64,000 nucleotides of DNA, taken from the NCBI GenBank assembly GCA_964270895.1, contig OZ185448.1. One strand, given 5' to 3'. The stretch's first letter is position 1, and each line of letters opens with the position of its first letter. This DNA comes from Podarcis filfolensis. Lineage: Eukaryota. Positions 576 to 33,465 of this stretch are shown one piece after another. Below the pieces are notes generated by a model that was not told the DNA's origin, ran no database searches, and saw only the letters and a program-made list of their open reading frames with translations. A program made the position numbers and the translations under genes.

Positions 576-1111
576 TGTTCAAAGTGCTATATAAATTGTA
601 CTGCAGTTGTTACCTGATCCAAGGGGGTGGTGGTGAGGGAAACAAATTCCAGGATTGTCACTTAGCCAGTCCAGCTCCAGATTAGGTTCTGAGCCTGCTG
701 CCCTTGTGGCAATACACTTTCGTCTAACTTTCTGATGGGGAAACTTCTACAATAATTGTGCTTTAGGTTGATTTGGTTTTTTCTTTTATCAGCAGAGTTG
801 TCCAGGATCCTGGTGTCATTTTTATAGGAGTGGGACTCTGGCTGTACAATTGCTGAAGATTTGTACTGACTGGGGACTTTACCTTCACTAAAGGGTAGGC
901 CCATAAACTACAAGTGCAGGCTAAAGACAGGATTTATGGACTGAGCCTTCCTGCCTATTGCAGAACAAACCTGTGCAGCTCATCCCTGTTTTTTTCACTG
1001 GCGCAGCTGCTCTGAGCTGGAATCCTGGAAAGAAAGTTCAAGGTTTATAAGTGACTGGTCAGCCCAAGAGATTTTTAATGGAAAATGAATGTCTAGGCTA
1101 GGGTTTTTAAA

Positions 1112-1150
<39 letters not shown>

Positions 1151-3970
1151 GAGGGGGGGGTGTTCCTCCACAGCTGATCCACCACACATTCTGGCCAAGA
1201 GAGAAATGCATAGCCAACAGATGAGACGACTCTAAGGACAGGTGAGTGGAAGGCTGCCTCTGTTTTTGCCTGCGTGTACGTGTTTGGTTGTGTGAACCAA
1301 CGATCCAGCAAGCGATTCCCGCCGCTGGATGCTGTGCTGGAAAAGCTTTCAGCCCCCCCCCCCCCCTTGCCTCTTTTTTCATCCACTTCTCCAAGGCTTT
1401 TTCTTTTCCCAAGGGCCTGATCACTCAAGCACCTCCGTCTCTCCCAGCGTGTGGAAAGTGGGAGGGAGCGGGGTTGCGGGGAGAGAAGGAGGGCCAACTA
1501 AAGCGTTAATTGTGCCTTTTTAGCTCATGTTCGGCCGGCAGCAGGAGAAGGCGCTGCTTAAACCTAATCAATAAAGTCTTGTCTATTGATCGTGTAAATT
1601 TCATTTGGCAACCGTCACTTACCAGTCTCTCCCACTGAGCCGGGAGAGAGGCAGGGGCAGACTCGTCCCCCGCCCCGCAGTAAGCTGCTTTGGGGGACGG
1701 GCCCTGAGTCTTTGGCGCGGCTTTCATGTGTGAATTTGAAAAAAGGGATGCTTTGCCCAAGTGGAAACCCGGAAACCCGCTCTTTCTAAGCCAGAGCCTT
1801 TGCAATATGTTCTCCGGCCCGCGATGACCTTGGGTGGGAGGGGGATACGTCTAAGTGCTGTTGGATGAGTGGGCGTGCCTAGACTTGCACTTGCCCCATT
1901 CCTAAACGGCCTTGACTGGAACCAGGCGACACTACCTACGGACTGGGACCATGTCTCTGGGCCCTCCGCCCTGAGCGTCATACTGGACAAACACCAAGGG
2001 CTGTGCTGAGTAGGGGTGGGTACAAATACCGCAATCAATGGATCTTGGCGGGGCAACCGGCCGTCGGATTCCCGCGTCGCTCTCCAGGGTACTGAAGGCT
2101 CCCTAACCCGCCCGCGTCTGCCTCCGCGTCGCTCTCCGAGGTGCTGAAGGTCCCCTGACCTGAGGAGCCAACTATCAAGGCAGAGGGTGCAGGTTCCTTC
2201 AGTCCTTTGCCTATTCCTGGCGGTAGGGAGAGGCTCTCTTTCTTCTCCCGCCTGCCCCGGGGGTCGCCTCTCTCTGTTGGCGGCGCCTCTGACCTCTGCC
2301 CGCCCCGTCCAGGTTGATTACTCCATCAGGCCCGTCCGGGTGTGCCAAGGCTGTAAAGAGCCATTACCCGGATTCTTTTATCAATGTCCAGTAATTAAAA
2401 TGTCACCGTTTAATTTTCAGGCCTTCTCGGAGCAATCTTTTCCTAATAAAGAGTCTAATCGAAAGGCTATTCGCCACCCTCCCACCCGAAAATGGCACCG
2501 GCAGGCGGGCTGCTGCGGCGGAGCGAGGCCCCCGCGCGGATCGATAGCGAGAGGGCTGGGATTGATCTGCCGCTAAAATGAAATTTATTGGGGTCATGGT
2601 TTTATATGGTGCTGATACAACTGTTAAATGGGGGACATTCGTTTCCAATAGGAGGCGTTTATTAAACTTCCACTGAATTAGACCGCGGTGATTTATGGGG
2701 CAATCTCCCGCCTGCGAGCCCCTCCAGGAACGAGAGCGGGGAAGGAAGGGCCTTGGCGGCCTCCTCTTAGAGAGATATTTATAAAGAGATGACACGGGCC
2801 TCTGAGTTTTAAGCCGGAGTGGCGAGGAAAGGACTTTCGAGGGACGTGACAAGGAGGCAAAGGATCGGGAGGCAGACGGAGGCTGGGTGGGGGACCTAAA
2901 AGGTGAGCCACCCAAGCCCACCAGTGCCAAGTGTGACGGTCTCACCCCCGCCCGAGTTCCCTACTCAGTTCAGGAATTTCCAACAGACTGGACAGAAAGT
3001 CTGGAGTAACATGGGTCTGCACAACTGCAAGCCTACCCAGGTTTTCTGCTAGCCGCCCTGAGCACGGTTGGGTGGAAAGGCAGGGTGCAAAGATAACGAG
3101 TAAAATAAAAGCAGGAAACAGGGAGTAAGTCCCATTGAAGGCGCTGGGACTTGCCTCCGAATCGACACTGATCTGCTTGTGCGCCCATTACCCAGCCGAA
3201 ATATTCCAAGATCAGCTCACGGGGCCAACTTTCCTGCCGACTGTCTTTGGTCACGAGACTTTAGGTCATCGGAATCAAAAGCATCCTACAAGGGTGGGCC
3301 TTCCCTCGCCGCTTCACTGGCACCTTGTTTTGGCTGAAATACACGGATTAACAGCAGAGCGGAAGAGGAAGTGCTGGATTAACGCATGAACCGCCGAAGG
3401 GGTTGCTGTGAGGCCTCCCTTTTAAAACAAAACTTTAGAAACTCCCACCCCAAGCCTTCCAGAGAATTTTTTCCCAAGTAACACTTGCACCTTTGATTTG
3501 CTCACAGCAGAGGTTGGGACAAGCCATCCCCCCTTTCCTCACTAGCGACTGGCATGATAACACTTTCCCCCCGTTCCTCCAGCTGTCCCATTTTAAAGAA
3601 GAACCCCCATCGCCACCCATTCTCCTCCTGCACAAACAGCTTTCTCATTACCCCTTGGGGGCAGGAAGAGGAGAGGAGTATAAAGCGAGGAACAAGGGGT
3701 GGGGGTTCTGTTTGGCAATCCAAGTGGGCCGGGCGGGGGGGAGCGTCTGCTTTGCACGCAGAAGAACCCAGGTACAATCCTGGCATCTCTAGGTAGAGCA
3801 GGAAGAGATTCCTTGCCTGAAACTCTGGAGAGCCATAGAATACGGAGCTTAGACTCAATATAAACCCATTTCCTGTGTTCGATATATGGAATGCGGAAGG
3901 AAATCGGTCATTCAAGTACACGCTGCGGTTTTACTCTGTGAACCGCCCTGAGACCTGCGGGTATAGGGTG

Positions 3971-4018: not shown

Positions 4019-5582
4019 GTGGCCAGAAGCCATCAAGGTCAGGAAATGAAGGGGGTGGGCCAAGGAGGACCCACCCTAGCTCTCCAGTACTTCGAGGTTC
4101 CCATCTCTGCCGCCACATGCCCCCTCTGTTTGACAGGGCTCAGGCTCTGCGGTGTGTTCTTGTAGTGTGGGTGAATGGGTGGCTATAGATATGGCAGAGA
4201 TTGAATGGCGGGTGCAGGGCTGGATACATGGTTAGAGAGGTTCTTGTTTTTCCCTCTGAATTTGTCTGTTTGTTGGTTTGTTTAAGTTATATCCCACCCT
4301 TCCTCCCAACGGAGCTCAGGGCAGCAAACACACAATGCTTATCTTGTGGCAGTTAGTTCCTTGGGTCCATTGGACATGTCGTAAAATAGTGTTTTCCTTG
4401 AACACAAGCTTGCTTGTAAACAGCCTAAGGGGCCAGGAGTGTGCCTGCAGATTCTTCTCCAATATAGACCCTCTTGGTCTTTCAAAGTGCTGCACCCAGA
4501 ACCTCTCCAGCAACCCCTGCTTGGAGGGCCAGCTCCCGCTCATATTTCAAAACAAGGGACAAAAGTGGAGACACTCAGCCATCTCCTTAACCCACACTCC
4601 CTCAGAAAAACAACAACCCGTGTATATCCCCCCAAAACCCCTTGCATTGGGTGATCATTGAGTTTTAATTAAAAATTGTTACAATTAAACCCAACACACA
4701 CGCACGTGCGCACACATGCCTTAATTACATTTGATTTTTAATTCCAAATCCGTGTTTACACAGTAAGCGAGACGTACCTCCTGATTATCCCCAATACTCT
4801 TTATACTGTACTAATTATGTAAATTAAACCTAATTAACTGACAAAAAACTGCAGTTAATTCAACTGTTAAAAGATATGGGATCGCAAGGAGCTTAAGAGA
4901 AGCAATGAAAGGAAAAGGGGGAGCGGATACCTTCCTGAGGAGGGCCCTCCCCTTCCTGTTTGCACTGGGAGAAGGCAGGTGGGGGTTAGTTATAAACTAG
5001 GCACTGGCTGTTAAAGTTAAAAAAAGGTCGGTTGTCGTCGTTGGCTTCCCCCCGATAAAGATCTGAGACCTCCAGAGCGACACGAGAGGTCAAAAGGAAG
5101 ATTTTGAACGGCCGCCCCATGGCTCCTTAATCAATGTTCCCACTTCACTCGCTCCCACCCCACCGCTTGCTCCCCTCCCTCCCCTTAATCCCGAAACAGC
5201 ACTGGAAATAATATTATTTCTGGCTGTGGTATAGTATCTCGGAGAGAAATACAAGCATGCTTCTAAGTGCGCAGCCACCCTAACAATGAGCGGGGAATGT
5301 TTTGTCGGAGCTGTTGGGCAGCAGAATGGATATCCTGCTGCGCCGAAACTTCAGTCCCTCCAAATTCCCATGTAAGGGGGAGGATTATGAGAGACCTCAA
5401 AAGGCAGCTGCTAGCCTTGCTTGTTGCTTTTATGCTCTCTTGGAAAGGTGGGGGGAGGGAGAAGTTAGAGAGGGGTGCTGCTCCCTGCTAATGTTCTTAC
5501 AGGGTGGGGGCATGTGGTATAGAGTCCTTCGTCTCACAATTCCCCCGAACTCTGTTACTCGGGCAGCGCCTCCTTTCACAAT

Positions 5583-5603
5583 GGCGCTGTCTCAGGTGCT
5601 GAA
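5583..5603 (-). promoter_or_regulatory. RE1/NRSE (REST) site
   Basis: Reverse complement TTCAGCACCTGAGACAGCGCC vs consensus TTCAGCACCnnGGACAGCGCC. Confidence 0.8.
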
Positions 5604-5665
5604 ACCACTGGTGCGGGTCGAATACCTGCAGCAACCGCAAGTGCGGGCCTCCGGCTAAGGGTCAG

Positions 5666-5686
5666 TTCAGCACCTGGGACAGCGCA
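5666..5686 (+). promoter_or_regulatory. RE1/NRSE (REST) site
   Basis: TTCAGCACCTGGGACAGCGCA, one mismatch to consensus at the last base. Confidence 0.82.
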
Positions 5687-8600
5687 GCGCTAGGCGACTC
5701 CCGACGAGTTCTTCCTTTTAAACCGATCGCGACAGGAGGCGAAGGCCGATTCGCCTCTGCGACTTTGGAACCGGTCACTTTCGATTCCAATCGCAGCTCT
5801 CTCGGAGTAAGTGTCTTGAGCGGCCCACAGTCCAAATAACGCCCCCCGCTTTTCACATTAAATCACCAGAACTAGGGTGGGCGAGACAATGCGGTCTTGC
5901 CCATTTACAAGCTAAGGCCTGAAGTTTGCATTCCTGAGATTTCACTCCTGAAAGCGCGTCAAAGCCTCTACTCGTAGTTATTTGTAATAACATGGTCTTG
6001 GCCGTCTCAGGCCTTTGGGACATACCCAGGTAAATTAACAAATAGCATTTCCCGCTTTCCCCAAACTTCCTGGGTGGTTAAGAGACTCATCCTTCTGGAC
6101 AGGGCTAGACTTGTACCGACGACCTCTTAAGCAAGACTCGTTTCCTCCCAGCGCAAAGCAATCAGGGTTGTTAAAATCAGCCAACTTTGGGGACTGCGGC
6201 GGGGTCCATCTCGGTTAGCTATTTGTAGGACAAGGTTTCTGGTTAGAAACGAGTCCAGAGCTCAATGCTCCATTCTCCCAAATTCGTTCCTGAGGTTAGA
6301 CTGCCTTCTTGACTTTTGGAAGAGGAGGGGCCGCCCCGGGATGACGCCGGAGCAAACGATCTGCCACTATTTTAAATTGAGCCCCCCCCCCCGCCAAAAA
6401 CACTTCGGGGTCCCCTGATGACTCAGTCGTCTGTCGGGAAGCAACTTCCCTCGGTGTGGCAAACTTTACCTCCCTCTGCGCCCTCCCCTTCCCAGTTCAC
6501 CACCCCCCTTCGGGGTTGCTTTTGCAATTGACACTCTGGGCTAACAGACGGGTCTAATATCAACCGCGCTGCAGAGGTTAAGAGCCCTGGGGCGAAGGGC
6601 GGCGGGGCGGGAGGGGGGCGAAGAGAGAGGGAGAGGGGGAGGAGGGAGGGGGAGGGAAGAGAGATCGGATTAAATACGGCGTTTTGTAAGTATTTAAAAT
6701 TACATTTAACCTCCGCGTCCCACGTTTGTTTATTTGCTCGGTTTTGTAACAAAACAAAACATAGAGTTTCAACATAAAGGAAGCTCATTAAACTATCACG
6801 AACTGTGAATTATTCTAATAAAAATATATATTAAAAAAACCCCGAAGGAAACACCTCCCTTCTTTCAAAACCAAATAAATATGCCACCAAATTAATACTG
6901 AAAACCTCACTTTTTCTCTCCCTCTCCCTCTCTCTTTAACCCATATTAAAATAATGCATAAAGCGCCTGTCTCCGCGGGGGGCGGCCTGCGCGCCCCTGC
7001 CAGCCTCTCCGGCTGGATCTTATGAAAAGGTTCCATCTTTTTAACTTCCTCGCCAGGGCGGGCGGGCCTCGGTTTGCAGCCGGGCGCCTCGGTTGGCGCA
7101 GTAATAACGGCTAATAAATATTTAACTACGCATTTGTTGTTGCTTTTTGCAGGGGGTGGGGGGTTAGGCGAGGGGGGGGGAGTCTTGCAGGGGCACCAAA
7201 AGCTCAAGGACGCCTCTCCCATCGCCAGGGCAAAGTCTAATTAAAGACAAATGCCGGGAGTGGGGGTGGGGGCAGAGATGTAGTGGAGGGGGGCGTCCTC
7301 AGCTCTGACCATCCAGGGCTGCAACATTTATTGGTCACAATGCAGAATTCAGTGTGTGCGCTTTAAATAATTAAAAGGCGAGGAATAATTACCGACTCGC
7401 ATTGTAATTATGGCGAGCCACCCGCGCTTGGAAACGGGAGCCGCATCGAGGGTGAGTCGAGGTTAGGGTTACCAAGAGGGCCTCTGCCAGGATTTTCCAG
7501 CTCACCTTTTGTCTAGCGGAGGCAGCCAGGAGGGATGCTGGACTTGGGAAAGGGGAGAGTGTGTTTGTGTGTTTGTATGTGGCTGTGCTCCTTAAATCCG
7601 GAGCACCAATTAAAAAGTCTTTTTTCTTTGCCCACAACTCCTTCTCCGCGCTCTCCATATCCTCCACCTTTTCGCTGCGAAAAAGAAGTCTCAAAACTCC
7701 AAGCCAAAACTCTCTCGAATTACCGCCCCCCGCTCTTTCTCTCTCTCCCCACTCACAAATGTAATGCATTCTGGTCTTCCTCCCCCCCCAACCCCCCAAC
7801 AACACCACACCAGACTTTTCTCGCAAGTCTACCCCCGGCGCCCCCCCTCTCCTCCGCCACCGCATATTCCTCGCCAGAGATTTATGCCCCCAAATCTGCT
7901 TTTCAAGGACAAACTCCGCTTCCTGATACATCAACTCTCAAGTAGGCGCGGGCATTTTCATAACAATGCGCGCTGGAAGATGGAGCCCATATGCCGGGGC
8001 GAAGGGCGAAAGCTGTTTTCCTGGCGGAGGGGAGCGCCCGCTCCCCTCAAAGTGCCTGAGGCCGCCAGCCTGGGCCGTTATTAACTTCTGTTTGATTAGT
8101 GTAATTGCTCAAATTTGGGGCCGGACAGTATGATTAATTACAGTTTAATTAACGCGTCCATTAAGAGCACTTAATGCCACGATGCTTTTAGAAACAGCCT
8201 GAGGAATGGGCGCTCCAGGAAAGAGGAGCGAGGGGAGATTGGAAGCGGCGGCGGCGGCTTAATTTTCATTTTTAACATTTATTTGGTTGGGGGGGAATAC
8301 ACCGGGTCAGGTTTCCGTAAGAAGGAAGCGGGAAGAGATGGAAGACAAAAAAAAGGCGGGAGCCCCCGACAGAAATACATTTGGGAAGAAATTAAATCCA
8401 AGACTAATAATAAAATAAAAATATTTTCTAATTTCGAAATCTTTCCCTGCATGCTGGATTTAAAAAACACACAAAAAACTCACACGCCTCTTTCCCTCCA
8501 TCCCTTTCGCGATCGGGAAAGCCAATCTTGGTCTGAAATTGAGTCTATATCCCACGTTTAAACCCCTTCCTACGGTGGGTTCCGGTGGAAATTGACCACT

Positions 8601-10379
8601 GAGGCATCTTCAGACCCCAGCCCTGGGCACCAGAAGTCCCATTTGACTCGTCCAACAATCGAAGTTTGTGATTGGGACGGGTAGTTTATAAGGGATGTGC
8701 TAAACAAACTACGAGGGGAAATCGTCATTTTATCTACCGGATTTATTTGTTTTGGGGAGGATTTTTTTTTTTTAATGAAAGGAACTAGAAAACCCCCTTC
8801 CGCTGTTTCCTCCACTTCATTTATGTATATGAAAATCTGAAATAAATATTTAGCTGCACTTTTATGCCGCAAAATGTTCCTCGGAAATATTTTAATCAAT
8901 TTAACCTATCCATCACTCATCATCCAGAGAGACAGTCTGTGTCCAAAACAGGTATGTAAATAATTGTACCTGTGTCACGCTAACATGCACTATTTAGGGA
9001 TCATTTTATAGGGGTAAATTATCTGAGCCGGTCCCGGGCACTCCAAGACGCCTCAACTTTCCCCGTTAAACAGCAGGCTCTCCATTAGGTATGTCGAGAC
9101 AGGCGCATTTCCACTTCCTTATTTAAATGTCCTCCCTGCAAACAGAGCCAATGAGGCTATAAATATTGATCAAGCTGTACAGTTTAGGCACCAGCCTCCT
9201 CCTCCTTCCCGGCAGTTTTGGACTCATCGCCTCCTGTTGACGGTGGCCACGATACTGTGTCATGAGACGGCGCGGGGTGGGGTGGGGGGACACGAGACAT
9301 GTGTCCCATCTTCAGAAGGGAGGACGGGTTTTGCCCGACAATTCCTGCAAAGCTAAGAACTCACCGGGGTTCCAATGCCCCCCCCGCGCCCGCCCTGCTG
9401 TCTATTGATCGGCTTATGAATAGTTAATTGGGCATCTTTTTCGTTGTATCTCTCCCCCCTCCGCCCCGCCCCCGCCAGAAGATTGCCTGTTAAATCAACG
9501 CCTTTGCCTGAGGGGGAGATACGATCTGTCCTCTCTCTCTGGTTGTAGATTTTTCGTGCCCAGACCCTCAGCAACCCTTATGCTTCAGTTCGTATCGTTC
9601 CCGGCGTCCGGGAGCGGAACTGTTATTTTGGGAGCGGGGAAGGGTTGCTCAGATTCCACCCACCCGCTTCCCATTTCTGGTTTTCAGTTGTGGTGAAGGA
9701 AATAAAAGTGGGACGCCAGAAGAGGGAAAAGAAAAGCGGGAGAGAGGCAGAGAGGGGGGGGGAGAAATTCGCCTGCGGGACTCTGGTCTTTCTGCACAGT
9801 TTGGTTAGGGTTGCGGGGCAGAGACCTGAGGCGCCTAGACAGGTGGTAAAAGCTCCAGCGTTTTAGCAGCCTCTCAGCCCAGAAATACCTTCCTTTGCAC
9901 TCTGTGCCCCGAACATCCTGTAGCCTCCCCATCCACCCCCGAAATTCTATATTAACAGCTCCTGGTGGGGTCGTCCCGCGTTCCGCGAAACTAAGTGGTT
10001 CAGCGCCGCTACCGAAGTCCAGGTGGTCGGTGAGGAGGTGGAATGAAGATCGCCTTCCACTCCGTAGCGAAACATCGCCCGCTGCCCCTTTAATATCACC
10101 ACACCTCAGGCCCCCTGCCCCCACGCCTCTTTAAGGAAACCAGCCGCCCTGGGGGCTGGGGGGGGTACACAGAGCAGGGAAACCGAGGAGCCCCAGTTGG
10201 CGCTGAGCAGGCAACAGTCGCGAGGAGGGGAGCTGAAACGGTTCTTCCTGGCGTGCGCCCTTGAAGGGGGGGTGACCTCTCCAAGCCTCCCTTTCGCTCC
10301 CCAGCCCTCCTCGGAAGATACCTGACCGGGGAAAGGTGTGCAAAAAAAAGGGGGGGAGGAACAAGTCCGCGCGCTTACC

Positions 10380-10647
10380 TTCTCGGCGCCCGCGGCGGCG
10401 GCTGCTTCGCACCGAATTTCCTCCTCCTCCCCCCGCAACGCCCCCTTCCCCACCGCGCCCCCCCAAAGCCGGCAATCTGTTTTTCCTTAAAGAAGCCCCG
10501 TCTGCGTTTTGATTGACTGGCGCCGCGGGATGATTGACACGCGCCAGAGTCCCGACGGCACTTCGGGTAAATATGTTGGTGCTGCTAAGTGGGAGTTGCC
10601 TTCCTATTATTTTAGCTGTCACTGGATCAATGTACAACGTCTTCAAC
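10380..10647 (+). promoter_or_regulatory. Putative SKOR1 promoter block with two TGATTGAC (PBX/MEIS-type) motifs
   Basis: CpG-rich; TGATTGAC at 10510-10517 and 10531-10538; directly upstream of the gap and the putative first exon. Confidence 0.5.
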
Positions 10648-10787
10648 NNNNNNNNNNNNNNNNNNNNNNNNNNNNNNNNNNNNNNNNNNNNNNNNNNNNN
10701 NNNNNNNNNNNNNNNNNNNNNNNNNNNNNNNNNNNNNNNNNNNNNNNNNNNNNNNNNNNNNNNNNNNNNNNNNNNNNNNNNNNNNNN
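10648..10787. other. Assembly gap (140 N)
   Basis: Run of N. Confidence 1.
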
Positions 10788-10976
10788 CCCCCCTCTCTCT
10801 CTTCCCGTGAAGCTTAGCCATGTGGTCAGCCTCCTGCTCGCATCTCCAAACCTACGGACGGAGGCAGAGGGCAGGCGCCCGCCTGGAGCAGCAGCCCCAA
10901 TGAAACTCCGCGCCGCGGCCGGAGGCTCCTAGCCCGTCCAGGATTTGGGGCAGAGGAAACCGCCTGTTTGCCGACG
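10788..10976 (+). other. SKOR1: Putative SKOR1 5' (probably untranslated) exon; 5' end hidden by the assembly gap
   Basis: Strong donor ACG|gtaagt at 10977, upstream of the exon-13178 acceptor. GC-rich, follows a promoter-like block. No transcript evidence. Confidence 0.55.
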
Positions 10977-13200
10977 GTAAGTCCCTCTCCCCTCTCCGCG
11001 TCTGCCTTAACCGAAGCTTGGTTGTTGTTTTTTTATTTGGGGGGGGGGATAGTACCAGAGACCGCTTGGCTTGGCACTCGCAACGGTTGCTTTTGCAAAG
11101 ACAGCTTGGCCTCGGCTATTCTCCACCTGCCCCTGCAAAAATAAATAAATAATAATCTCTCCTCCCCAGATTCTTCTAATTTTGCAGGTTTGTTTGGGGA
11201 GCCTCGCCTGCCTGCCTTGCGTCTGTTTGTTGGTTCCTCTGATTTCCTGCTTGTTAGATTTTTGTATTCTCTGTGCATATTCGTTTTTAAATCTAATATC
11301 AATATTTCCTTCCTGATTTCGGGTTTGGTTTTCTTTTCGCGGCCGCTGCCGGAGATCAGCCACTTTTTCCAGAAACCTCCGCTTTAAAAAAGGGCAAATA
11401 CAATTAAAAAAAAATAATCAGGCCCAGCGAGAGGTCTTGCTTTGCGTATTGATGTCCTTTGAAAATGTAATTAATTTTCACGTGAAGGCGCATTTGTTTA
11501 TTTCGCGTTTCCCCTTTTCTTGTTATGTTTTAAACAATCTGTCTTCTGGTGGTTGGAGTCTGTTTGTTTGCATGTTCATTTTTATTTTTTGGCGGGGGAA
11601 GACGGAGATGTGAGATATGGGGGGGGGCAGGAAGTTTGTATTCACATTTGAGCGAGGCACCAGCGTCTGGACTATTCTGTGTAATTACCACGAAAGCCTC
11701 TTACTTAATCCGGGGCGATCCTGTTTGGGTAAGCTCCTTCCCTTGGCTCAGGGTCCCCTTCTGCTGCTCCGCTTCCCCCCACTTCCTTCTTTTTTATTTT
11801 CTTTTAACGTGCCGGTGGAGTCTTTAAGTGGCACGGTTAAGTAATCTTCCTTGCTCCTAATCTCCTGTAAAGACATTAGAAAACGGGGGAGGAGGGGGAG
11901 GGAGACTTTCCAACGATGCGCAACTACTTTCAAGTCTGTTCCATCAACCCTATTTAGAAATTAGAGACCCATACAGGGAGGGGGGGGCAATAAAAGCAAC
12001 TTGGACTGGCTTCCCCCACCCCAACTCCCCCCGTTTTCTGGTTGTTTGGAAGCTCCTGGATCTTTTCCTAATTTTTCAACCCCCGTTTCTGTTTGGCAGC
12101 AGGGAAACCCAGAGTTGGTTGTGGGTTTGTTTGCTCTTTTTCTTTTTTGTTAAATACATCTGGCACCATGTTGGGGCCGGATTACTGCTCAGGCTAAGAA
12201 AGGCAGCGAGTGTATTTAAACCAGCCTTGATCCTGGCCGTCTAAAGCGGGAGCGAGCCGGGCGCTTTGGCTCCGGATTCGCTGGGTAGCTCCTCTAACGT
12301 GTAAATACAATTGCCCGCTGCTCTAATTAAAGCCGCCTCCTTTTCTCCCGCCCCCGGTGGAAGCAATTGCCGTTTTCCTAATAGTGTTGTTGCTGTTGTG
12401 GTTGACTATATACCATAACATATGCACAAGGATTTACAAACAAAACAAACATATCCGCCCTCCAAAAAAAAAAAAAAAAGAACTAAGTCCTTTTAAAAAG
12501 AGAGACAGTGAGTGAATGTGAAGGAAAAACGGACAAACGCAGAGAAAATACTTTCTTCTGGGAAGGCTGTCACACGCTCTCCCCAGTCACGCGTGTGACG
12601 TTTTTGGGATGTGTTTGTTCGTTTCACAGTAAACCACCCCTGAAACCCCAGCCAGGGCAGTGTTTAGCCTCAGGATCCACCATGGGTGTGTGTGTGTGTG
12701 TGTCTGTCTTTCTAAAAACAACAAGCAACGTTTGTTTCTTTCCCAATATTTGTGGGGTTTCGAAATGTCTCGTTTGAGGGGTAGCGGCGGTGGAGTTTGA
12801 TGTGGTTCCCAGGCTCCAGCAATTTCCGATAGAGGGTCAAGAAGGAACCCCATTTCCCTCGCCTAAAAGGAAGGAGGAAGGGAGGGGCGGGTGCAGAGAC
12901 AGGTGCTCACCCCGCCACCCACCCAAGGAGTTTTTCGCCCGGCTGGATCGACTGGGCCCGGCTGTCTGTGAACTTGGGTCTGTCCTCATTTATTTCCGGC
13001 GACGGCTCTTGCCTCGACGGCGAGCCTCTGGGCTTCTGGGGGTCGAGTCTCCCCCGCCCAGCCCCCTCCCCAAGCCGCGGCTTCCCCCTCCTCGCAGCCA
13101 CCACTACTTCGTAAGAAAATGTTGGCAGCCTCCTCCCGTCCTGAGTGCTTCTTCTTCTTCTCCTTCTTCCTTCGCAGGAGCTCGGCCGTCTGGGGGGGAG

Positions 13201-15396
13201 ATGGAGTCGCTGGCCGCCGCCAGTCAGCTGGGAACTGGGAGAGACTCTGGCTCCTCCTCCTCCTCCTCGCCCCACTCCAAGCAGGAGCTGCAGCCTTACT
13301 CGGGCGCCAGCCCCCTGAAGCCCAACCAAGTCGGGGAGACCTCCTTGTATGGCGTGCCCATCGTGTCGCTCGTCATCGACGGGCAGGAGCGCCTGTGCCT
13401 GGCGCAGATCTCCAACACGCTGCTCAAGAACTACAGCTACAATGAGATCCACAACCGTCGGGTCGCGCTGGGGATCACCTGCGTGCAGTGCACCCCGGTG
13501 CAGCTGGAGATTCTCCGTCGGGCCGGCGCCATGCCCATCTCCTCGCGGCGCTGCGGCATGATCACCAAGCGGGAAGCCGAGCGCCTTTGCAAGTCCTTCC
13601 TGGGCGAGCACAAGCCGCCCAAGCTGCCGGAGAACTTCGCCTTCGACGTGGTGCACGAGTGCGCCTGGGGCTCGCGCGGCAGCTTCATCCCGGCCCGCTA
13701 CAACAGCTCGCGGGCCAAGTGCATCAAGTGCAGCTACTGCAGCATGTACTTCTCTCCCAACAAGTTCATCTTCCACTCCCACCGCACCCCCGAGGCCAAG
13801 TACACGCAGCCCGACGCCGCCAACTTCAACTCGTGGCGCCGCCACCTCAAGCTCAGCGACAAGACGGCCACCGACGACCTCAGCCACGCCTGGGAGGACG
13901 TCAAGGCCATGTTCAACGGCGGCACTCGCAAGCGGACCTTCTCCTTACACGGGGCGGGCGGCGGCGGTGGCGGTGGAAGCGCCTCCCACGCGGCCAAGAG
14001 CGCCCTTCACCCGCCGCCGCCCTCCTCCACAGACCTGCCCCCGGTGCACAAGAGCCTGCGCTGCAGCGGCGCCGAGGAGCAGCCCGGGGAGCGCGGCGGG
14101 CTGGGCTTGCCCGCGGGGGCGCACGGGCCGGCCGCCGCCGTGCGAAGCTACCCGGTCATCCCGGTGCCCAGCAAGGGCTTCGGGATGCTGCAGAAGCTGC
14201 CGCCGCCTCTCTTCCCGCCCCCCTACGGCTTCCCCGCCGCCGCCTTCGGGCTGTGCCCCAAAAAGCAGGACGATTCCCTGGGAGGCGCCGGAGGAGGCGA
14301 CCAGGTCAAAGCCGGTGCTTTGCCGCAGGGCATGTTTTGGGGGCCGCCGCACCCCCACCCGCCCCAGCCTCAGCAGCAGCCGGGGGGCTCGGCTAAGGAC
14401 AGCGGAGTCTACCCGTCCTTCCCCATGTTCTGGCCGGCCTCCGGGAGCCTCCCGGTGCCGCCCTACCCTGCCCAGAGCCAGGCCAAGGCAGCCGCCACGG
14501 CGGTTGTTGTGGCCGCGGCCGCCGCGGCCGCAGCCGCCGCAGTAGAGCCTCTGGGCCTGCGGAGCCACGGCCACGTGGAGCTGGAAGGGTCGGAGCCGTC
14601 CGGCAGCGAGCGCAGCAGCGCCACCCCACAGGAAGGCTCGGGCTCCGGGGCCGCCGACGGCGAGCGCTGCTCCAGCGCCCTCTCCAGAGCTGCGGCCGTC
14701 GGGGAGGAGGAGCGCTCCGGGGACGAAGCCTTGCTGCCCCCGCTGCCCCTGCCCAGGAAAGGCAGCTACCTGTCGGCCTTCCGCCCCGTCGTGAAAGACG
14801 CGGAGAGCATAGCCAAGCTCTACGGGACCCGCGAGGCCTACGGAGGCCCCACCGGCTGCCCGGGCTACCTCTCACCGGACTTTCTCAGCGAGGGTAGCTC
14901 CAGCTACCGCTCCCTCTCTCCGGGCAACGACACGGTGGACGAGCCCGAGGTGGACGTCGAATCCAACCGCTTTCCCGAGGACGAGGACGAGGAAGAGGTG
15001 CCCGTCGAGGAAGCCGAGGAAGCCTCTCCGCCCCAGCAGCTTCTCTTGACTGAGACCGAGGAGCCTCTTGCAGCCGTTGGCAGCGTCGGCGTCCTGGCGG
15101 CTTCGGAGAAGCCTGCGGAGAAGGCCCTGGAGCCCGAAGGGAGCCCCCCGGCCAGGAGCAACAGCAGGGGCGGCTATGAGGTGCGAGGAGGGGTGATATG
15201 GGGAAGCGGGGTGGGAACCAAGGGCGGCGATGCCAGTTCCCGCCACTCCCGTCCTCGCCTCGAATTCCACCACGATGGAGAGAGCGTGAGTCGCTCAGAA
15301 CTAGGTCTGGGCGGCTCTCCAGCGCCGGAGTGGGAGGTCGCGCGCGCAGGGGGTGTTATTGAGAGACTTTCTCCCAGCCGTGGCCGCCAGATGCAG
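13201..15396 (+). CDS. SKOR1: SKOR1 large coding exon (DHD/Ski-Sno and SAND-like domains, Gly/Pro/Ala-rich region)
   Basis: Translation MESLAAASQLG...KPNQVGETSLYGVPIVSLVIDGQERLCLAQISNTLLKNYSYNEIHNRRVALGITCVQCTPVQLEILRRAGAMPISSRRCGMITKREAERLCKSFLGEHKPPKLPENFAFDVVHECAWGSRGSFIPARYNSSRAKCIKC matches SKOR1 as I recall it (EHKPPKLPENFAFDVVHECAWGSRG is SKOR1-type). Acceptor ttcgcag|GA after a pyrimidine tract, exon start 13178. Best donor CAG|gtgggt at 15397 (phase 0). Alternative phase-0 donors at 15181 and 15286. Confidence 0.96.
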
Positions 15397-16440
15397 GTGG
15401 GTGGATGGATGGTTTAGGGCAGGACCTCGGGCTTGTGGGACCTTCTGCTTCGTTATTCTTGCTGATTTTCCATAACCTTTGCGCAAAATAGTGGCTAAGA
15501 AATAGGGAGGCTGGGAGCCCAGGCTCAGCCCAGGAATGCATGTTCCTAATAAGACAGGAGCTTACAGTCCTGCCCGATAAGGACCCCCTGCCCTCCTCCA
15601 CCCTGTTACTTGATATAAGGAGGCAGGTGGGAAGACGGACCGTTTGTAGTTTGTTAAACAATTGGGAGTCTGAGTCATCCCTGGTCTAGAAGACCAAGAG
15701 TTGTTAGGAAAGAGTGACCCTGAGCTCCGAGGTTTTGCTCGCGAGTACAGCTCTGGATTTCCCAATAGACACACCAAGCACGTGCTTGGGGCACCAGCAA
15801 AACAGGGACACGCGCTCACAAACCGATATTTTATTTTATTTTTAAGAATTTGACATTTGATTTTTAAAAAAATGCACCGAATTGGTTGTCTGTGGTCGGG
15901 GAAAATCATAACTTTGTTAGTCTTTCTTTCATCCCACTACGCGCACTTCTCCCGCTTTTAGTATTGTTTTTATTCTGAGTTACATACTAGACTGGAGGGC
16001 TGCATCATAATCTTCTAAATGCTAAGGGCCTCTTAATCTGACCCTGCAGGAGCGCAAGGTTTTAGTGAACTCTGATAAAAGAGACTGGGATGCGGGAAGA
16101 CTCTTCCAAGGGAGAGAGGAAGGAGGTCAGAAACCAATGGTTGGATCCAGCACCAGTCCACGTCAGAGCAGACCCATGAAAATTAATGAACACGACTAAC
16201 ATAGGTCCATTCATTTCAATGGGTCTACTCTGAGAAAAACTTAATTGCGTGAGACCGAATGGCTTTCAATTGCAGATTGAAAAGAAGTCTGAGAGGTTTA
16301 AAAGTTGTTTTTTTATCTGCTCAAGTAGGTTGTGGAATTATTAATTTTTTTTAAAAAAAAAGACAGGCCAGGTAAGCAAAGGATGCTGGACCAAGTGCCC
16401 CCACTTTAATTGCAAATTACTTCCCACATTTTCAGGAGAA

Positions 16441-16640
16441 AGGCCGGGCCGTAGCTCAGGGGTAGTCTAGAGACCTGTTTTGCATGCAGAAGGTCTCAAG
16501 TTGAATCCCGGGGCCTCCAGGTAAAGCTAGGCGAGATCCCCGTTTCTCAACCCTGGAAAGCCGCTGCCAGTCAGTGTAAGTAATACTGAGCTAGATGAGC
16601 CAATGACCTGACTTGGTATGAAACAGCTTTCCATGTTCCT
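16441..16640 (+). mobile_element. tRNA-Ala-derived SINE (family name uncertain); further copies near 27042-27191(-), 32000-32190(-), 32765-32860(-), 32960-33130(+), 40487-40640(+), 46018-46190(+), 54495-54665(-)
   Basis: Head gtagctcag...ttttgcatgcagaaggtc..gttgaatcc (anticodon-like TGC), body ctgccagtcagtgtag..aatactgagctagatg, tail ccatgttcct. Confidence 0.75.
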
Positions 16641-16930
16641 GGGCAAACACAGCACAAGTTAGTGAGACCCTCCTAAATCTGCGCTCTTAATAACGCATTG
16701 ATGGGATATCCGTGGGCTTGAGCCAGGCCAGCCCTGAACCACGTGATACGATTCTCCAAGACTGTACCTGCCTGGGCTGGGAGAAGGCGGGGGGTTGACC
16801 CTGATCGCAGTCGAAGTGTCAAAACCTTTCCAGTTCCGTTAATTTAGGGCTCGGATTTGAAAGTGTGCATCCCACCCGTTGCCAAAAGACCTCAAATGCT
16901 GCGAAGGCACCGCGCAGCCCTTGCGCTGTC

Positions 16931-16951
16931 TTCAGCACCGTGGACAGATCC
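16931..16951 (+). promoter_or_regulatory. Intronic RE1/NRSE (REST) site
   Basis: TTCAGCACCGTGGACAGATCC; both half-sites at canonical 2-nt spacing. Confidence 0.65.
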
Positions 16952-18463
16952 CAGCTCGCAGCGCCGCGAAGGCTGGGAGTTGGGTTAAAGCTGCTTCCGT
17001 GAAGACCGGCTGGTGGGCCCCATCTCTCCCGGAATCGAGGGGCAGATGCCATAGCAGGCATCTAATTAATAAGAAGCCCAGAGGACTTGCCTCGCTCGCC
17101 CCAATTTCTCTATGGCAGAGGCGGTGGCTTTGAACCAGGTTGCTCCGGCAACAGCCAAAGGGGCGCACCAAGGCAGCGAGCGTTTGGAAAGACGCTTCTA
17201 ATCAAATGGATTTGGGAAGGAAGCCTTCTCCCCACAGAGAGTTTTTAAATCATTGTTTATTTATTTACCGCGTTTCTGGCGCACCTTTTCCTCGAAGGGA
17301 CTCCAGGTGTGGCACATGGTTCCCCCCCCCCCCCCATTTAATGCCAACAACAACCCTCTGAGGTAGACTAGACTAAGTGAAGGCAGTGACTGGCCCGCTG
17401 CTGTATGAACTGACCCACTTGCAAAGACCCTAAAAGTCGGAGCGCAGTCCTCAGGCAAGAGACGCTGCGCGCTTGCAGCGAGGCAACGCAAGTTTCTAGT
17501 CCTCATCCCGCGCAAAACAGTTGACAAGAGGGAGAATTATCGACGCTAGGAATAAGCGGGAGGACGCTAATCGAGATAATACAATACGGGTAGGGGTCAA
17601 GGGACTGCCACAGCGACGACTCCCCCCCCCAGCCCGCTTTCTGTGGGGTGGGAGGAGAGCGGTGTCTCGCTTAGCTGAAAAGGAGAGTTCTCCTTTCAAT
17701 ATTAGGAAGTAGGTCTCCCTCCCCCTCTCCCTCCCCATTTTAACTACCTCCGATGAGACTGGATCGCCAGCATGAATCCTCCCTAAATCCACCCCCACCC
17801 ACCCCCACAGCTTCCTGGGTCCCCACACTCTTTAGACACGAAGTGTTTCAGGCACGACCCCTGGGAACTATAAGGACACGGATTACCTAGGAAGAGTCGT
17901 CACTCCCTCCACCCCCGGATCTATTGGCTGAAGCTGCTAGAATTAAAGTACTGCTAGATTTGAGGAGCTGAGAAAGGGAAGGTGGGGGTGATGCCGGGGG
18001 CGGGGGGCTGGTCAGAGGGGAGAGAAGCTTTCAGGCTTTGAAAAACTCCTGAGTTCCAAGGCTGACTTGGAAGGGGGCTAATTTTCCTCTTCCGTCCCCA
18101 ATAAATATACCTCTAAGAAAATCGCCGCTGAAGTGGCCTTTTCTGTGCTGGACAAGAGACCTTTTACACACACAGCCGCCGAAAACCCCCCACTCCTTTC
18201 CCTCTCCCCAATGGACAATTATTTTTCTGAGTTGAGCTGGAGCGGGGTCTTGTTTTCGGAAAAGCTGGGCGGGGGACAACGAAGAGTTTCCAATTTGGCA
18301 GCGTTTGGAACGCTTTTTTTGGGGGGGGTCTCACTTATTTCCTTTCAGAGAGATTTTCCCACGGCAGCATAACATTAATTAACAAATAGAATAAAAAATA
18401 AACAGTGGAGCATAGGAATAATAATAATAAATGTAGGTAACTGTTGCGCTGTTTCTTTCGCAG

Positions 18464-18563
18464 GTGTATGCGCAAGACAGAGAGGATCGGTCGCAAGCTC
18501 TCAAAGCCAGCACCCCTCTAGGCCCACAGACAACCCCTTACCTCTGCACTCCGGAGAGGAATG
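18464..18563 (+). CDS. SKOR1: SKOR1 coding exon 2 (VYAQDREDRSQALKASTPLGPQTTPYLCTPERN)
   Basis: tttcgcag|GTG acceptor, G|gtaagt donor, 100 nt, phase 0 to 1. Resembles mammalian V(F/Y)APERDEH...YVCTPE. Confidence 0.92.
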
Positions 18564-19194
18564 GTAAGTATGAACCACGTGCCTAGAGATACTTTGAAGC
18601 ATCAGGGGCGGGATTTTTGTTTGATTCCAAAAGTCTTAATAATTGCCTGAATTGATGTCAAAACGTTTCCACTTCCTTAAAAAAGTAATATTTGGCCAGA
18701 CGTTTCAAATAAACCAGGGGTCATTTTTTTAAAACAAAACTTTCACCTGCCAATATTGTTTATCTAATATTGCTATTGGCTTTATTTATTTATTTGTGGG
18801 GTGGAGGGAGGGAGAAAATAGACTATGCCTTGCAGGCGTTTAATCAAGCATGCTCTTTCCGGGGGTCGTATTGCAATGTTTTCAACTCTCCTAAGGACAG
18901 AGACTCTGCAAAGCCCACTTCTTTAAAGCGCAGCCGCGCGCCCACCCCCACCCCATAGAAGGAGGGCAGCTGGAAACGCTGCTTGAGGAAGGAGTCGGTG
19001 GAGGGGGGGGTGGTTAGAAAACTGGTGGCCGGGATAAAAGCTTCCCAAGGAGCAAGCTCCTTTCCTCTGCAAGGCGATTAGGCTGTCCCCTAAGAAGGCT
19101 TTAACGAGGACTTTGTCCTTAATTATGTAATTAAGGATATATCAGGCTCATACTTTCGTTGCCTGTGCTGCAAAATCGGTTTATTCGCTCTAAG

Positions 19195-19302
19195 AACCAG
19201 ATAAAGAAGACAATCATTCGACAGCTGAGGATTTGGAGAGCAAGAAATCCTATCAGAACCAAAGGAGCGTCTCTCAGCCCAGCCCAGCCCACACCGACCG
19301 AG
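19195..19302 (+). CDS. SKOR1: SKOR1 coding exon 3 (EPDKEDNHSTAEDLESKKSYQNQRSVSQPSPAHTDR)
   Basis: ctctaag|AA acceptor, G|gtaaaa donor, 108 nt, phase 1-1. Matches EPDKEDNHS...SQPSPANTDR. Confidence 0.94.
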
Positions 19303-22300: not shown

Positions 22301-22433
22301 AGGTGATGGGGCGGGGTGGGGGGGTTTCCCTACACTTGGCTCCTCTTGTGCCTTTGCCAGGGTGTGTGTGCGTTTTGGGGGGTGAGGGCGGAATCAGCTC
22401 TCACCCTTTGCCTTTCCTCTTTCCTGGGCACAG

Positions 22434-22505
22434 GAGACGAGGTGGTCAGCATTGACGTCACCGGGACTCAACTGGGGGAGAAAGACATTGGGAACCTCGC
22501 CAGAG
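22434..22505 (+). CDS. SKOR1: SKOR1 coding exon 4 (GDEVVSIDVTGTQLGEKDIGNLAR)
   Basis: cacag|GA acceptor, G|gtaaga donor, 72 nt, phase 1-1. Matches LDVTGTHLVEKDIENLAR. Confidence 0.94.
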
Positions 22506-22751
22506 GTAAGAGCGCCTTTTTGGTGGTTTTGCTGGACAAGGGAAGGGGGCGGGGAGAGAAGCGGGGCCTGCGCAAAGAAGGTCGAGGACAATGGGAAGCA
22601 TCTAAGGATAACTTTCACAAAGGGCTAATCCACAGCGATTCTCCCTCCCGGACCTCCACCCCTGTTATCTTCTAGCTCAGTTCCCCACCCTGGTGCCCTC
22701 TCGATGTTGTTGGACTACAGCTCCCATCAGCCCCAGCCTGCTGGAGTCCAA

Positions 22752-23075
22752 CCGAAGTGCTTCTTCGCGCAGCGTGCAGTTAAACTGTGGAACTCACTGC
22801 CACTGGAGGAAGTGACGGTCACCAACCTAGATGGCTTTAAAGAGGACTGAATAAATTCATGGAGGAGAGGGCTAATCAGTGACTGCCAGCCAGGATGACT
22901 GTATTCTTCCTCCACAGTTGGAGGCAGCAATGCTTCTGAATCTCAGTTGCTGGAAACCAGAGGAGGGGAGAGGGCTCTTATGTTAGATCCTGCTTGTGGG
23001 TTTCCCATCTGGTTGGCAACTGTGAGATCCGGATGCTGGACTAGATGGGCCTGATCCAGCAGACTCCTCTTACAT
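22752..23075 (+). mobile_element. Old CR1-type LINE 3' fragment (related pieces near 36730-36843, 38840-38990, 41465-41610, 59270-59452)
   Basis: ttaaactgtggaactcactgcca...gatggctttaaagagg and the 3' UTR motif gatgctggactagatgggcctgatccagca. Confidence 0.65.
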
Positions 23076-23995
23076 TAACCAACTGACCGGGCACCAGACC
23101 GGGGAGAGACTATAGCTCTTCTTTTCTTATTAAATACATGCCTTGTTATTTAGGCAAACACTCTCTCTCTCTTTTTCCGTCGTCTGCCTACATCCAGTCT
23201 CTCTTGTCTACACTCCGTAGCCCAAACGTCTCCCTCGCTCTTCAGTCACCAGATGAAGCAAACGCGCTCCCTCCCGCATTTCGCTACCCCCCCCCGTTTT
23301 TCATTCACGTTTCTAGGTCAGGAGACCCTGTTGGCTCGCCTGCCTGTCTTAATGTAGATTTGAGAGGGACGCATTAGCAGCGATTCCTCGAGATCTGTGG
23401 TCCATCGAACCTAATTTCTAGATCTATCTATCCATCTCTGGGGCGGCGGCGGGGGGAGCCCGTTCATAATGCGCATTGACAGCCTCGCTATGGGTTTCTG
23501 CTGTGATATGGAAAGGGTCTTTTGTCAGTATCCAAGCAGGAGAGTGAGATGGGTGGTTCCTCACCGGGTCAGGGCGCACCAGAGAGAATATCTGGAAGGA
23601 GGATCCTTACCTCCCCAGCCCAGATTTGTAGCTTGGGTTCAAGGAAGCCCGCTGACCTAGGAATCAAGGGGCTTAGTTCCGAGTAAACAGGCGTTGGATT
23701 GCGCTAGTAGAGACGATGCATTGGTGTATTTGTTTTGATTTTATTTTCTTTTAAAATAGCAACAACCCGAAATTAATAGAATAGCTTTTTGACGAATTTA
23801 AATGCCCTAGCTGTCAATCTCCCCCCCCCTTTTCTCTCTCTAATAAAATCTCTTATATTAGGGTTGGGCTAGATGACCCTTGAGGTTCCTTCCAGCTCTG
23901 TAATTATATGATTCCCCATGGGGAAATGAGAGGATTGGGGTCCACTTATCCCCGACTCTCCCTCTGGGCTCAACCCAATATTCTTTTCTTCACAG

Positions 23996-24070
23996 ATGAG
24001 TTGCAAAAACTCCTCATGGAGCAAATGGAGCTGAGGAAAAAACTGGAACGGGAATTCCAAAGTCTGAAAG
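23996..24070 (+). CDS. SKOR1: SKOR1 coding exon 5, coiled coil (DELQKLLMEQMELRKKLEREFQSLK)
   Basis: ttcttcacag|AT acceptor, G|gtatat donor, 75 nt, phase 1-1. Confidence 0.96.
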
Positions 24071-30362: not shown

Positions 30363-30412
<50 letters not shown>

Positions 30413-30453
30413 CCTCTCTCCCTCTCTCCCTCTCTCCTGCATCCGCTCCACAG

Positions 30454-33420: not shown

Positions 33421-33465
33421 GAATCGGATCTCCTGGGCAGGATAATAGTAGTAGTAGTTGTAGCA

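What the first reader, a model, noticed from the sequence alone, without database searches (positions are those of the whole stretch)
5583..5686. Inverted pair of near-perfect REST/RE1 silencer elements 5 kb upstream of SKOR1
Seen: TTCAGCACCTGAGACAGCGCC (minus strand, 5583-5603) and TTCAGCACCTGGGACAGCGCA (plus strand, 5666-5686) are 21-bp inverted repeats with a 62-bp spacer, differing at 2 positions. Established: TTCAGCACCnnGGACAGCGCC is the REST site that silences neuronal genes outside neurons, and SKOR1 is a neuron-restricted corepressor. Inference: this is a double-occupancy REST module limiting SKOR1 to post-mitotic neurons. I do not know whether it has been described. A chance 21-bp match twice within 100 bp is very unlikely.
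Basis: partly seen in the sequence, partly recalled or inferred. Interest (0 to 1): 0.72.

Follow-up and report, generated by a model that had tools for sequence, protein, structure and literature searches.

The report
Conserved REST silencer pair upstream of SKOR1
Two facing copies of the binding motif for the neuronal-gene repressor REST sit 7.5 kb upstream of the lizard SKOR1 gene and are conserved across lizards and snakes, so they are very likely real silencer sites; this is an ordinary kind of element at a locus already recorded as REST-bound in mouse.

Summary
RE1/NRSE 21-mers lie at 5583-5603(-) and 5666-5686(+), one mismatch each to the consensus, differing from each other at 2 positions, with a 62-bp spacer. 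They are part of a cluster of five RE1-like sites (also 2076, 2128, 16931) where shuffles predict 0.04.

The gene is SKOR1 in a lacertid lizard. The pair is 7.5 kb upstream of the ATG, not 5 kb.

The pair sits in the same syntenic interval in gecko, skink and python. Motif identity is 79-84% against 32-33% in the flanks. Spacing varies (centre to centre 78-287 bp), and in each lineage a different copy is the weaker one. That fits two independent, partly redundant sites better than a fixed double-occupancy module.

Turtle, emu and bowfin have no RE1 within 10 kb either side of the gene. Guinea pig and hyena carry one split RE1 (7-bp spacer) on the same strand in the same interval. It lies where published mouse REST ChIP-PET clusters fall, 4.2 kb 5' of Lbxcor1/Skor1.

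I found no sign of a transposon, a chance match or a selected hairpin. REST occupancy and silencing in lizards remain untested.

Verdict: a new member of a known kind, of modest interest. The scan earlier reported a similar conserved RE1 pair behind CDK5R2 in this genome.

The parts
5583..5603 (-). Left RE1/NRSE site, TTCAGCACCTGAGACAGCGCC. It carries G12A in the right half-site and is probably the weaker copy in this species.
   Evidence: Orthologues are python L002:3388-3408, gecko L001:3974-3994 and skink L005:1858-1878. Motif identity is 84% against 32% in the flanks. A mouse site differing only at motif position 19 (TTCAGCACCTGAGACAGCACC) was only modestly enriched, 1.37-fold in ES cells.
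5604..5665 (.). 62-bp spacer between the two sites. Neither its length nor its sequence is conserved.
   Evidence: Spacers are 62, 57, 79 and 266 bp in lacertid, python, gecko and skink. Conservation in the alignment is weak.
5666..5686 (+). Right RE1/NRSE site, TTCAGCACCTGGGACAGCGCA. Both half-site cores are intact, and only position 21 differs from the consensus.
   Evidence: Orthologues are python L002:3466-3486, gecko L001:4074-4094 (4 mismatches) and skink L005:2145-2165. Motif identity is 79% against 33% in the flanks. A mouse site with the same two half-sites, TTCAGCACCACGGACAGCGCA, is listed among NSC ChIP-PET motifs.
2076..2148 (-). Distal RE1 position, tandemly duplicated in this lineage (2076-2096 and 2128-2148, 52-bp period).
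   Evidence: Single orthologues are gecko L001:909-929 (0 mismatches) and python L002:345-365.
16931..16951 (+). RE1 site in SKOR1 intron 1.
   Evidence: Orthologues are gecko L001:12828, python L002:12697 and skink L005:13230. The motif is nearly invariant in the four-species alignment.
13201..15288 (+). SKOR1 first coding exon, the presumed target gene. Further exons run to 30548.
   Evidence: Pfam, homologues, and tblastn of Zootoca SKOR1 against the window.
4623..4975 (.). Conserved non-coding block 'CNE-A', the upstream anchor of the syntenic interval that holds the pair.
   Evidence: Local blastn against gecko, python, skink, turtle, emu, guinea pig and hyena.
6443..7525 (.). Conserved non-coding block 'CNE-B', the downstream anchor of the interval.
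   Evidence: Local blastn. Only a 47-bp core (7367-7413) is retained in mammals.

Best explanation
The two motifs are genuine binding sites for the zinc-finger repressor REST/NRSF. They belong to a conserved set of four RE1 positions around squamate SKOR1: a distal site about 11 kb upstream of the ATG, this inverted pair at about 7.5 kb upstream, and one site in intron 1. Each 21-bp site would bind one REST molecule, which recruits its corepressors (Sin3/HDAC and CoREST, from established knowledge) and keeps the CpG-rich SKOR1 upstream domain silent wherever REST is present. That means non-neural cells and neural progenitors; repression lifts when REST falls in differentiating neurons. The two copies act as independent, partly redundant sites rather than as a fixed-geometry dimer. 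Shown here: motif identity, conservation confined to the motif, synteny, and REST occupancy of the same interval in mouse. Inferred: occupancy in lizards, repression, and SKOR1 as the target.
For: Motif and chance: one mismatch per site, and 5 sites against 0.04 expected. [quoted passage not shown] Gene: SKOR1. Conservation: the inverted pair lies in the same interval between CNE-A and CNE-B in gecko, skink and python. Motif pairwise identity is 84% and 79% against 32-33% in the flanks. Every substitution falls in one arm only, and several variants have bound precedents in mouse, namely position-6 G or A, GGTCAG, and a terminal A. The distal and intronic sites are footprinted in the same way. 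Mouse data (Johnson et al. 2008, PMC2573930): ChIP-PET clusters PET11 and PET15 have cores at chr9:62949224-283, 4.2 kb 5' of Lbxcor1 and 12.5 kb 3' of Map2k5. The proximal RE1 at chr9:62945203 was enriched by ChIP-chip in ES and NS cells. Guinea pig and hyena carry a conserved split RE1 on the same strand in the same interval (L006:5354-5378, L007:6119-6143). In guinea pig it lies about 4.0 kb upstream of the orthologue of the mouse proximal motif, which equals the mouse distance from motif to peak. The pair sits in a CpG-rich patch (observed/expected 0.94).
Against: Turtle, emu and bowfin have no canonical or split RE1 within 10 kb either side of SKOR1, so SKOR1 regulation does not universally need these sites. 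The left site carries G12A, and comparable mouse sites were weakly bound or unbound. The mammalian split site has a 7-bp spacer, whereas only 8-9 bp spacers silenced in MPRAduo. Lbxcor1 does not appear in the text held for the mouse dominant-negative REST expression dataset. I mapped the mouse peak onto the split site by distance, not by alignment.
Confidence: 0.72

Rival explanations
1. The sites bind REST but serve something other than simple SKOR1 silencing. Candidates are an unannotated neuron-specific transcript or alternative SKOR1 promoter starting nearby, Polycomb or chromatin-domain nucleation for the CpG-rich domain, or regulation of MAP2K5.
For: The transcription start is unknown and the pair is 7.5 kb from the ATG. 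CpG observed/expected stays at about 0.6-1.2 over roughly 5.5-15.5 kb. The mouse tables list other transcripts (AK047472, AK043409) beside the proximal RE1. SKOR1 keeps its conserved coding sequence and CNEs in turtle and emu without these sites.
Against: SKOR1 is the nearest gene in every species. The MAP2K5 3' end lies outside the window; in emu it is several kb further upstream, and in mouse it is 12.5 kb from the peak. No Rfam family matches at the pair. No long ORF lies there.
Confidence: 0.15
2. The pair is the remnant of a transposable element or a local inverted duplication. On this view the inverted repeat is structural (terminal inverted repeats) and is not selected for REST binding.
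For: RE1 copies are known to spread on transposable elements in mammals (title and abstract of PMC1557810). The second copy is in inverted orientation and is absent from mammals, so it probably arose by duplication or de novo in the squamate stem.
Against: The inverted repeat is exactly the 20-21 bp motif and does not extend into the flanks. The flanks have no other copy in the 64-kb window or in eight other loci. The pair is single-copy and syntenic in four squamate families. Motif-only conservation over that depth needs selection.
Confidence: 0.05
3. The inverted repeat is selected as a nucleic-acid hairpin or cruciform, for example an RNA stem-loop or a microRNA-like precursor.
For: The segment 5575-5695 folds into a long stem at -64.7 kcal/mol, z = -5.25 against shuffles.
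Against: That stability follows trivially from any inverted repeat. Across four species the arms differ at 2, 3, 6 and 5 positions with no compensatory change, and the loop varies from 57 to 266 nt. There is no Rfam match. What is conserved is the match of each arm to the RE1 consensus, not arm-to-arm pairing.
Confidence: 0.03
4. The motifs are a chance occurrence with no function.
For: None beyond the general abundance of motif-like sequence in large genomes.
Against: Expected 0.04 per window against 5 found. Similar excesses occur in gecko and python. The motifs are conserved in four squamate families.
Confidence: 0.01

Closest known systems
Canonical RE1/NRSE silencers bound by REST/NRSF (for example the sites catalogued in mouse ES and neural stem cells, Johnson et al. 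2008, PMC2573930)
   Same: A 21-bp motif with left half-site TTCAGCACC, a 2-bp spacer and right half-site GGACAGCGCC. It lies next to a neuron-restricted gene, in CpG-rich DNA, and only the motif is conserved. Clusters with several RE1s under one peak are on record (716 motifs under 665 PET clusters).
   Different: No occupancy data exist for this species. Here two sites face each other in an arrangement kept across squamates, and they sit within a four-position cluster.
Mouse Lbxcor1 (Skor1) REST-bound region, 4.2 kb 5' of the gene (ChIP-PET PET11 and PET15 clusters, Dataset S4 of PMC2573930)
   Same: The same gene and the same intergenic interval between Map2k5 and Skor1. Guinea pig and hyena have an RE1 on the same strand at a similar offset from the shared CNE-A anchor (822-856 bp, against 705 bp in the lizard).
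   Different: The mammals sampled have one split RE1 with a 7-bp spacer instead of two canonical sites. Homology of the sites is plausible but unproven, because turtle and emu lack them. Mouse and guinea pig, but not hyena, also show a proximal RE1 near the promoter that squamates lack.
Non-canonical (atypically spaced) RE1 motifs (PMC2573930; MPRAduo study PMC9903721)
   Same: The mammalian counterpart has both half-sites in the canonical order and orientation, with an expanded spacer.
   Different: Its spacer is 7 bp, whereas the class shown to silence has 8-9 bp. The lizard sites themselves are canonical.
Conserved RE1 pair behind CDK5R2 in this same genome (earlier scan finding s1-329738)
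   Same: This is another multi-site RE1 arrangement beside a neuronal gene in the same lizard. The earlier follow-up reported it as ancient and REST-bound in mouse.
   Different: It is a different locus with same-orientation sites, and I did not re-test it here.

Membership tests
RE1/NRSE (REST-binding silencer element) | 21-bp sequence matching the RE1 consensus, with both half-sites in canonical order, orientation and 2-bp spacing | tested here: met
   One mismatch per site. The half-site scan gives a 2-bp spacer with 0 mismatches in the left half and 1 in the right half for both sites. I had no formal JASPAR or PSSM matrix, so no PWM score was computed.
RE1/NRSE (REST-binding silencer element) | The sequence variants present are compatible with REST binding in vivo | tested here: inconclusive
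   Right site: mouse TTCAGCACCACGGACAGCGCA, with the same half-sites, lies under an NSC PET cluster. Left site (G12A): the mouse site TTCAGCACCTGAGACAGCACC was enriched only 1.37-fold in ES cells and not in NS5 or 3T3, and other G12A sites were weak or unbound.
RE1/NRSE (REST-binding silencer element) | Purifying selection on the motif itself (a phylogenetic footprint) | tested here: met
   Identity of 84% and 79% in the motif against 32-33% in the flanks among lacertid, python, gecko and skink. The pair is syntenic between the same CNEs in all four.
RE1/NRSE (REST-binding silencer element) | REST occupancy at the site in vivo | not testable with these tools
   No squamate REST ChIP data were available. 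As indirect evidence, mouse ChIP-PET clusters lie in the corresponding interval, mapped by distance onto the split RE1 seen in guinea pig and hyena.
RE1/NRSE (REST-binding silencer element) | REST-dependent repression of a linked neuronal gene | not testable with these tools
   Lbxcor1 does not appear in the text held for the mouse DN:REST expression dataset. No main-text paper links SKOR1 to REST.
Transposable element with terminal inverted repeats | Inverted repeats extending beyond a factor-binding motif, and multiple dispersed copies | tested here: not met
   The repeat arms equal the motif. The flanks are unique in the window and in all fetched loci. A whole-genome copy count was not possible.
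Structured RNA / microRNA-like hairpin | Compensatory changes that preserve pairing, and a known family match | tested here: not met
   No compensatory changes, 2-6 arm differences per species, and loop lengths of 57-266 nt. No Rfam hit at the pair.

The most novel reading that the evidence does not exclude
REST control of SKOR1 has been rewired across amniotes around one ancient binding position. On this reading, a single site about 0.7-0.85 kb downstream of CNE-A existed in the amniote ancestor. It survives as a split RE1 in placental mammals. In the squamate stem it was elaborated into a canonical inverted pair plus distal and intronic sites, with later copy-by-copy turnover. It was lost altogether in the turtle-bird lineage. 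This would make the locus a compact natural example of silencer gain, redundancy and loss at a developmental gene implicated in restless legs syndrome.
Probability: 0.3. Interest if true: 0.45.

Novelty: new member of a known kind. Interest (0 to 1): 0.3.

Why it matters
SKOR1 (also called LBXCOR1 or Corl1) is a neuron-restricted corepressor, and MAP2K5/SKOR1 is a replicated restless-legs-syndrome locus (PMC6093889 abstract). REST control of the gene has never been discussed in the main text of the papers I could search; it appears only as rows in 2008 supplementary tables.

The lizard pair, its squamate-wide conservation and the mammalian split site point to a specific interval that should be checked in human and mouse REST ChIP data. 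The locus is also a small, tractable case for asking whether paired silencer sites act redundantly.

It does not reveal a new kind of element.

Tried and rejected
- **Contig look-ups that failed.** Four of twelve gave nothing. Possum, gerbil and coelacanth SKOR1 isoforms were not on record, and the caecilian file was too large.
- **RNA evidence.** There is therefore no transcript or transcription-start evidence.
- **Literature.** No main-text paper links SKOR1 or LBXCOR1 with REST; the two papers that mention both do so in unrelated contexts. The supplements of PMC4055426 and PMC4499139 have no SKOR1 entry, and PMC12343973 and PMC3530684 have no supplements held.
- **PWM scan.** No JASPAR or PSSM matrix was available offline, and I did not type in the published site lists. 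I used mismatch and half-site scans plus published bound variants instead.
- **Rejected readings.** I rejected chance, transposon ends and a selected hairpin; the rival explanations give the reasons.
- **Relaxed scans.** Scans allowing up to 7 mismatches, plus half-site scans, of the turtle and emu syntenic intervals found no credible remnant.
- **Gene model.** I searched only exon 1, by reference, and never joined the spliced exons into one sequence.

Full report
**Observation.** The window holds TTCAGCACCTGAGACAGCGCC on the minus strand at 5583-5603 and TTCAGCACCTGGGACAGCGCA on the plus strand at 5666-5686. Each has one mismatch to TTCAGCACCNNGGACAGCGCC. The repeat finder reports 20-nt arms, 95% complementary, 62 nt apart. 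The two differ at motif positions 12 and 21. Allowing up to 3 mismatches, the window has five matches: these two plus 2076-2096(-), 2128-2148(-) and 16931-16951(+). Shuffles gave a mean of 0.04 and never more than 1. All five lie in the first 17 kb.

**Context.** The ORF at 12790-15417 carries the Ski_Sno_DHD and c-SKI_SMAD_bind domains.
- Its exon-1 part (13201-15180, searched by reference) is 99% identical to Zootoca vivipara SKOR1, and all best hits are SKOR1 orthologues. The window is therefore from a lacertid lizard.
- tblastn of the Zootoca protein places the exons from 13201 to 30548. I searched only exon 1, by reference, and never joined the spliced exons.
- The pair is thus 7.5 kb upstream of the ATG. 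The site at 16931 is in intron 1, and the sites at 2076 and 2128 are about 11 kb upstream.
- The pair sits in a CpG-rich patch (GC 58%, observed/expected 0.94), at the start of a stretch running to about 15.5 kb where CpG observed/expected stays at about 0.6 or above.

**Comparative evidence.** I fetched SKOR1 loci with 10-kb flanks from gecko (L001), python (L002), turtle (L003), emu (L004), skink (L005), guinea pig (L006), hyena (L007) and bowfin (L008).

The upstream region is collinear, with several conserved non-coding blocks. The pair lies between CNE-A (4623-4975) and CNE-B (6443-7525). In that same interval:

| Species | Minus-strand site | Plus-strand site | Centre-to-centre |
|---|---|---|---|
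| Lacertid (window) | 5583, 1 mismatch | 5666, 1 mismatch | 83 bp |
| Python (L002) | 3388, 1 mismatch | 3466, 1 mismatch | 78 bp |
| Gecko (L001) | 3974, 1 mismatch | 4074, 4 mismatches | 100 bp |
| Skink (L005) | 1858, 3 mismatches | 2145, 1 mismatch | 287 bp |

- In alignments of each site with 50-bp flanks, pairwise identity is 84% (left) and 79% (right) inside the motif, against 32% and 33% outside it. This is the pattern expected of a protein-binding footprint.
- The distal site (gecko 909, a perfect match; python 345) and the intronic site (gecko 12828, python 12697, skink 13230) are conserved in the same way.
- The lacertid lineage has tandemly duplicated the distal site.

**Pair or two singles?** Spacing is not held, so no helical phasing is conserved. 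From memory, the skink spacer looks like a SINE/BovB-type insertion; I did not test this. All substitutions hit one arm only, with no case of both arms changing together.

The weakened copy differs by lineage:
- In the lacertid the left copy carries G12A.
- In the gecko the right copy has changes at positions 3, 9, 18 and 21.
- In the skink the right copy reads GGTCAG.
- In the python both copies are strong.

Published mouse ChIP-chip rows give a rough calibration. TTCAGCACCTGAGACAGCACC, one base different from the lizard left site, was enriched only 1.37-fold in ES cells, and other G12A sites were weak or unbound. Sites resembling the right copy were enriched 2-fold or more. Position-6 G or A, GGTCAG and a terminal A all occur among bound mouse motifs. 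This fits two independently binding, partly redundant sites with turnover better than an obligate double-occupancy module.

**Other amniotes.**
- Turtle, emu and bowfin have no canonical RE1 (up to 4 mismatches) and no split RE1 anywhere in the gene or its 10-kb flanks. Relaxed scans of the syntenic intervals found nothing credible. The emu interval is only 474 bp long.
- Guinea pig and hyena each carry one split RE1 on the minus strand in the same interval. Guinea pig has TTCAGCACC|GAGCTGC|GGACAGCTCC at L006:5354-5378, and hyena has TTCAGCACC|AAGCTGA|GGACAGCTCC at L007:6119-6143. It is a small island of guinea pig-hyena similarity (83% over 47 bp).
- Measured from the shared CNE-A anchor column, the site lies 705 bp downstream in the lizard, 822 bp in guinea pig and 856 bp in hyena.

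**Published occupancy.** No main-text paper links SKOR1 or LBXCOR1 to REST. The supplements of Johnson et al. 2008 (PMC2573930) do.
- Dataset S4 lists REST ChIP-PET clusters PET11 (core chr9:62949224-268) and PET15 (core chr9:62949263-283), annotated '4229/4256 bp 5' of Lbxcor1, 12.5 kb 3' of Map2k5'.
- Datasets S1 and S2 list a proximal RE1, TTCAGCACCGCGAACAGCAGT, at chr9:62945203. It was enriched in E14 ES cells (1.78-fold, p reported as 0) and NS5 cells (1.32-fold), and barely in 3T3 cells.
- Guinea pig has the orthologous proximal motif at L006:9375-9395.
- Its distance to the split RE1 is about 4.0 kb, which equals the mouse distance from the proximal motif to the PET cores (4.00-4.06 kb). 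I therefore infer that the mouse peak sits on the split RE1. This rests on distance only, because I could not see mouse sequence.
- One caveat: MPRAduo found silencing only for 8-9 bp spacers, whereas this site has 7.

**Rivals.**
- Chance is excluded by the statistics and the conservation.
- Transposon ends are not supported. The repeat is confined to the motif, the flanks are unique in the window and in all loci, and the locus is single-copy and syntenic. An ancient duplication as the origin of the second copy remains possible and would not affect present function.
- A hairpin is not supported. The stable fold (z = -5.25) is trivial for any inverted repeat, there are no compensatory changes, and there is no Rfam match.
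- Another target, or a chromatin-domain role, cannot be excluded, because the transcription start is unknown and archelosaurs (turtles and birds) manage without these sites.

**Limits.** The N run at 10648-10787 was left untouched. No human contig was fetched or compared. Four contig look-ups failed, so the choice between one ancient site lost in the turtle-bird lineage and two independent gains stays open; each needs two events.

**Verdict.** The RE1 identity is strongly supported, and the REST-SKOR1 link has indirect experimental backing from mouse. The specific 'double-occupancy' mechanism is not supported. This is a new member of a well-known element class, at a locus where REST binding already sits in published supplementary data. 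The scan earlier reported a comparable conserved RE1 pair behind CDK5R2 in this genome.

Noticed in passing
window 2076-2148: The distal RE1 is tandemly duplicated (52-bp period) in this lacertid. Gecko (L001:909-929, a perfect consensus match) and python (L002:345-365) have a single copy.
   Followed up: partly
L005:1879-2144: The skink spacer between the two RE1 sites is 266 bp. It contains a (GTT)n run and a stretch that, from memory, resembles a BovB/SINE-type repeat, so a transposon seems to have inserted between the two sites without either being lost.
   Followed up: no
L006:9375-9395: Guinea pig has a promoter-proximal RE1-like motif about 600 bp upstream of the SKOR1 ATG. It corresponds to the mouse Lbxcor1 proximal RE1 that was bound in ES and NS cells. 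It was not detected in hyena, the squamates, turtle or emu.
   Followed up: partly
window 1018-1182: A weak, below-threshold Rfam hit to SCARNA7 (31.7 bits, gathering score 65, E = 0.0004) overlaps a block conserved with gecko and emu (window 833-1115). It may simply be conserved MAP2K5-distal or 3' sequence.
   Followed up: no
window 5500-15500: CpG observed/expected stays at about 0.6-1.2 over roughly 10 kb from the RE1 pair through SKOR1 exon 1. From general knowledge, such a broad CpG-rich domain is typical of developmental regulator genes.
   Followed up: partly
window 60788-61866 and 43867-45219: Retroelement remnants lie downstream of SKOR1. One ORF has a reverse-transcriptase domain (RVT_1, E = 9e-25) and is followed by an overlapping ORF. 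A 450-aa minus-strand ORF has no Pfam match and looks like part of a LINE ORF.
   Followed up: partly
window 10648-10787: A 140-base run of N lies upstream of SKOR1.
   Followed up: no
window 33066-33611: An ORF containing a run of 23 asparagines, pointing to a trinucleotide microsatellite within it; the DNA itself was not read.
   Followed up: no
window 15180-15288: I first placed the exon-1 splice donor at 15180 (GAG|GTGCGA). The annotated Zootoca protein aligns without a break to 15288, so the exon 1 end is uncertain by 108 bp.
   Followed up: partly
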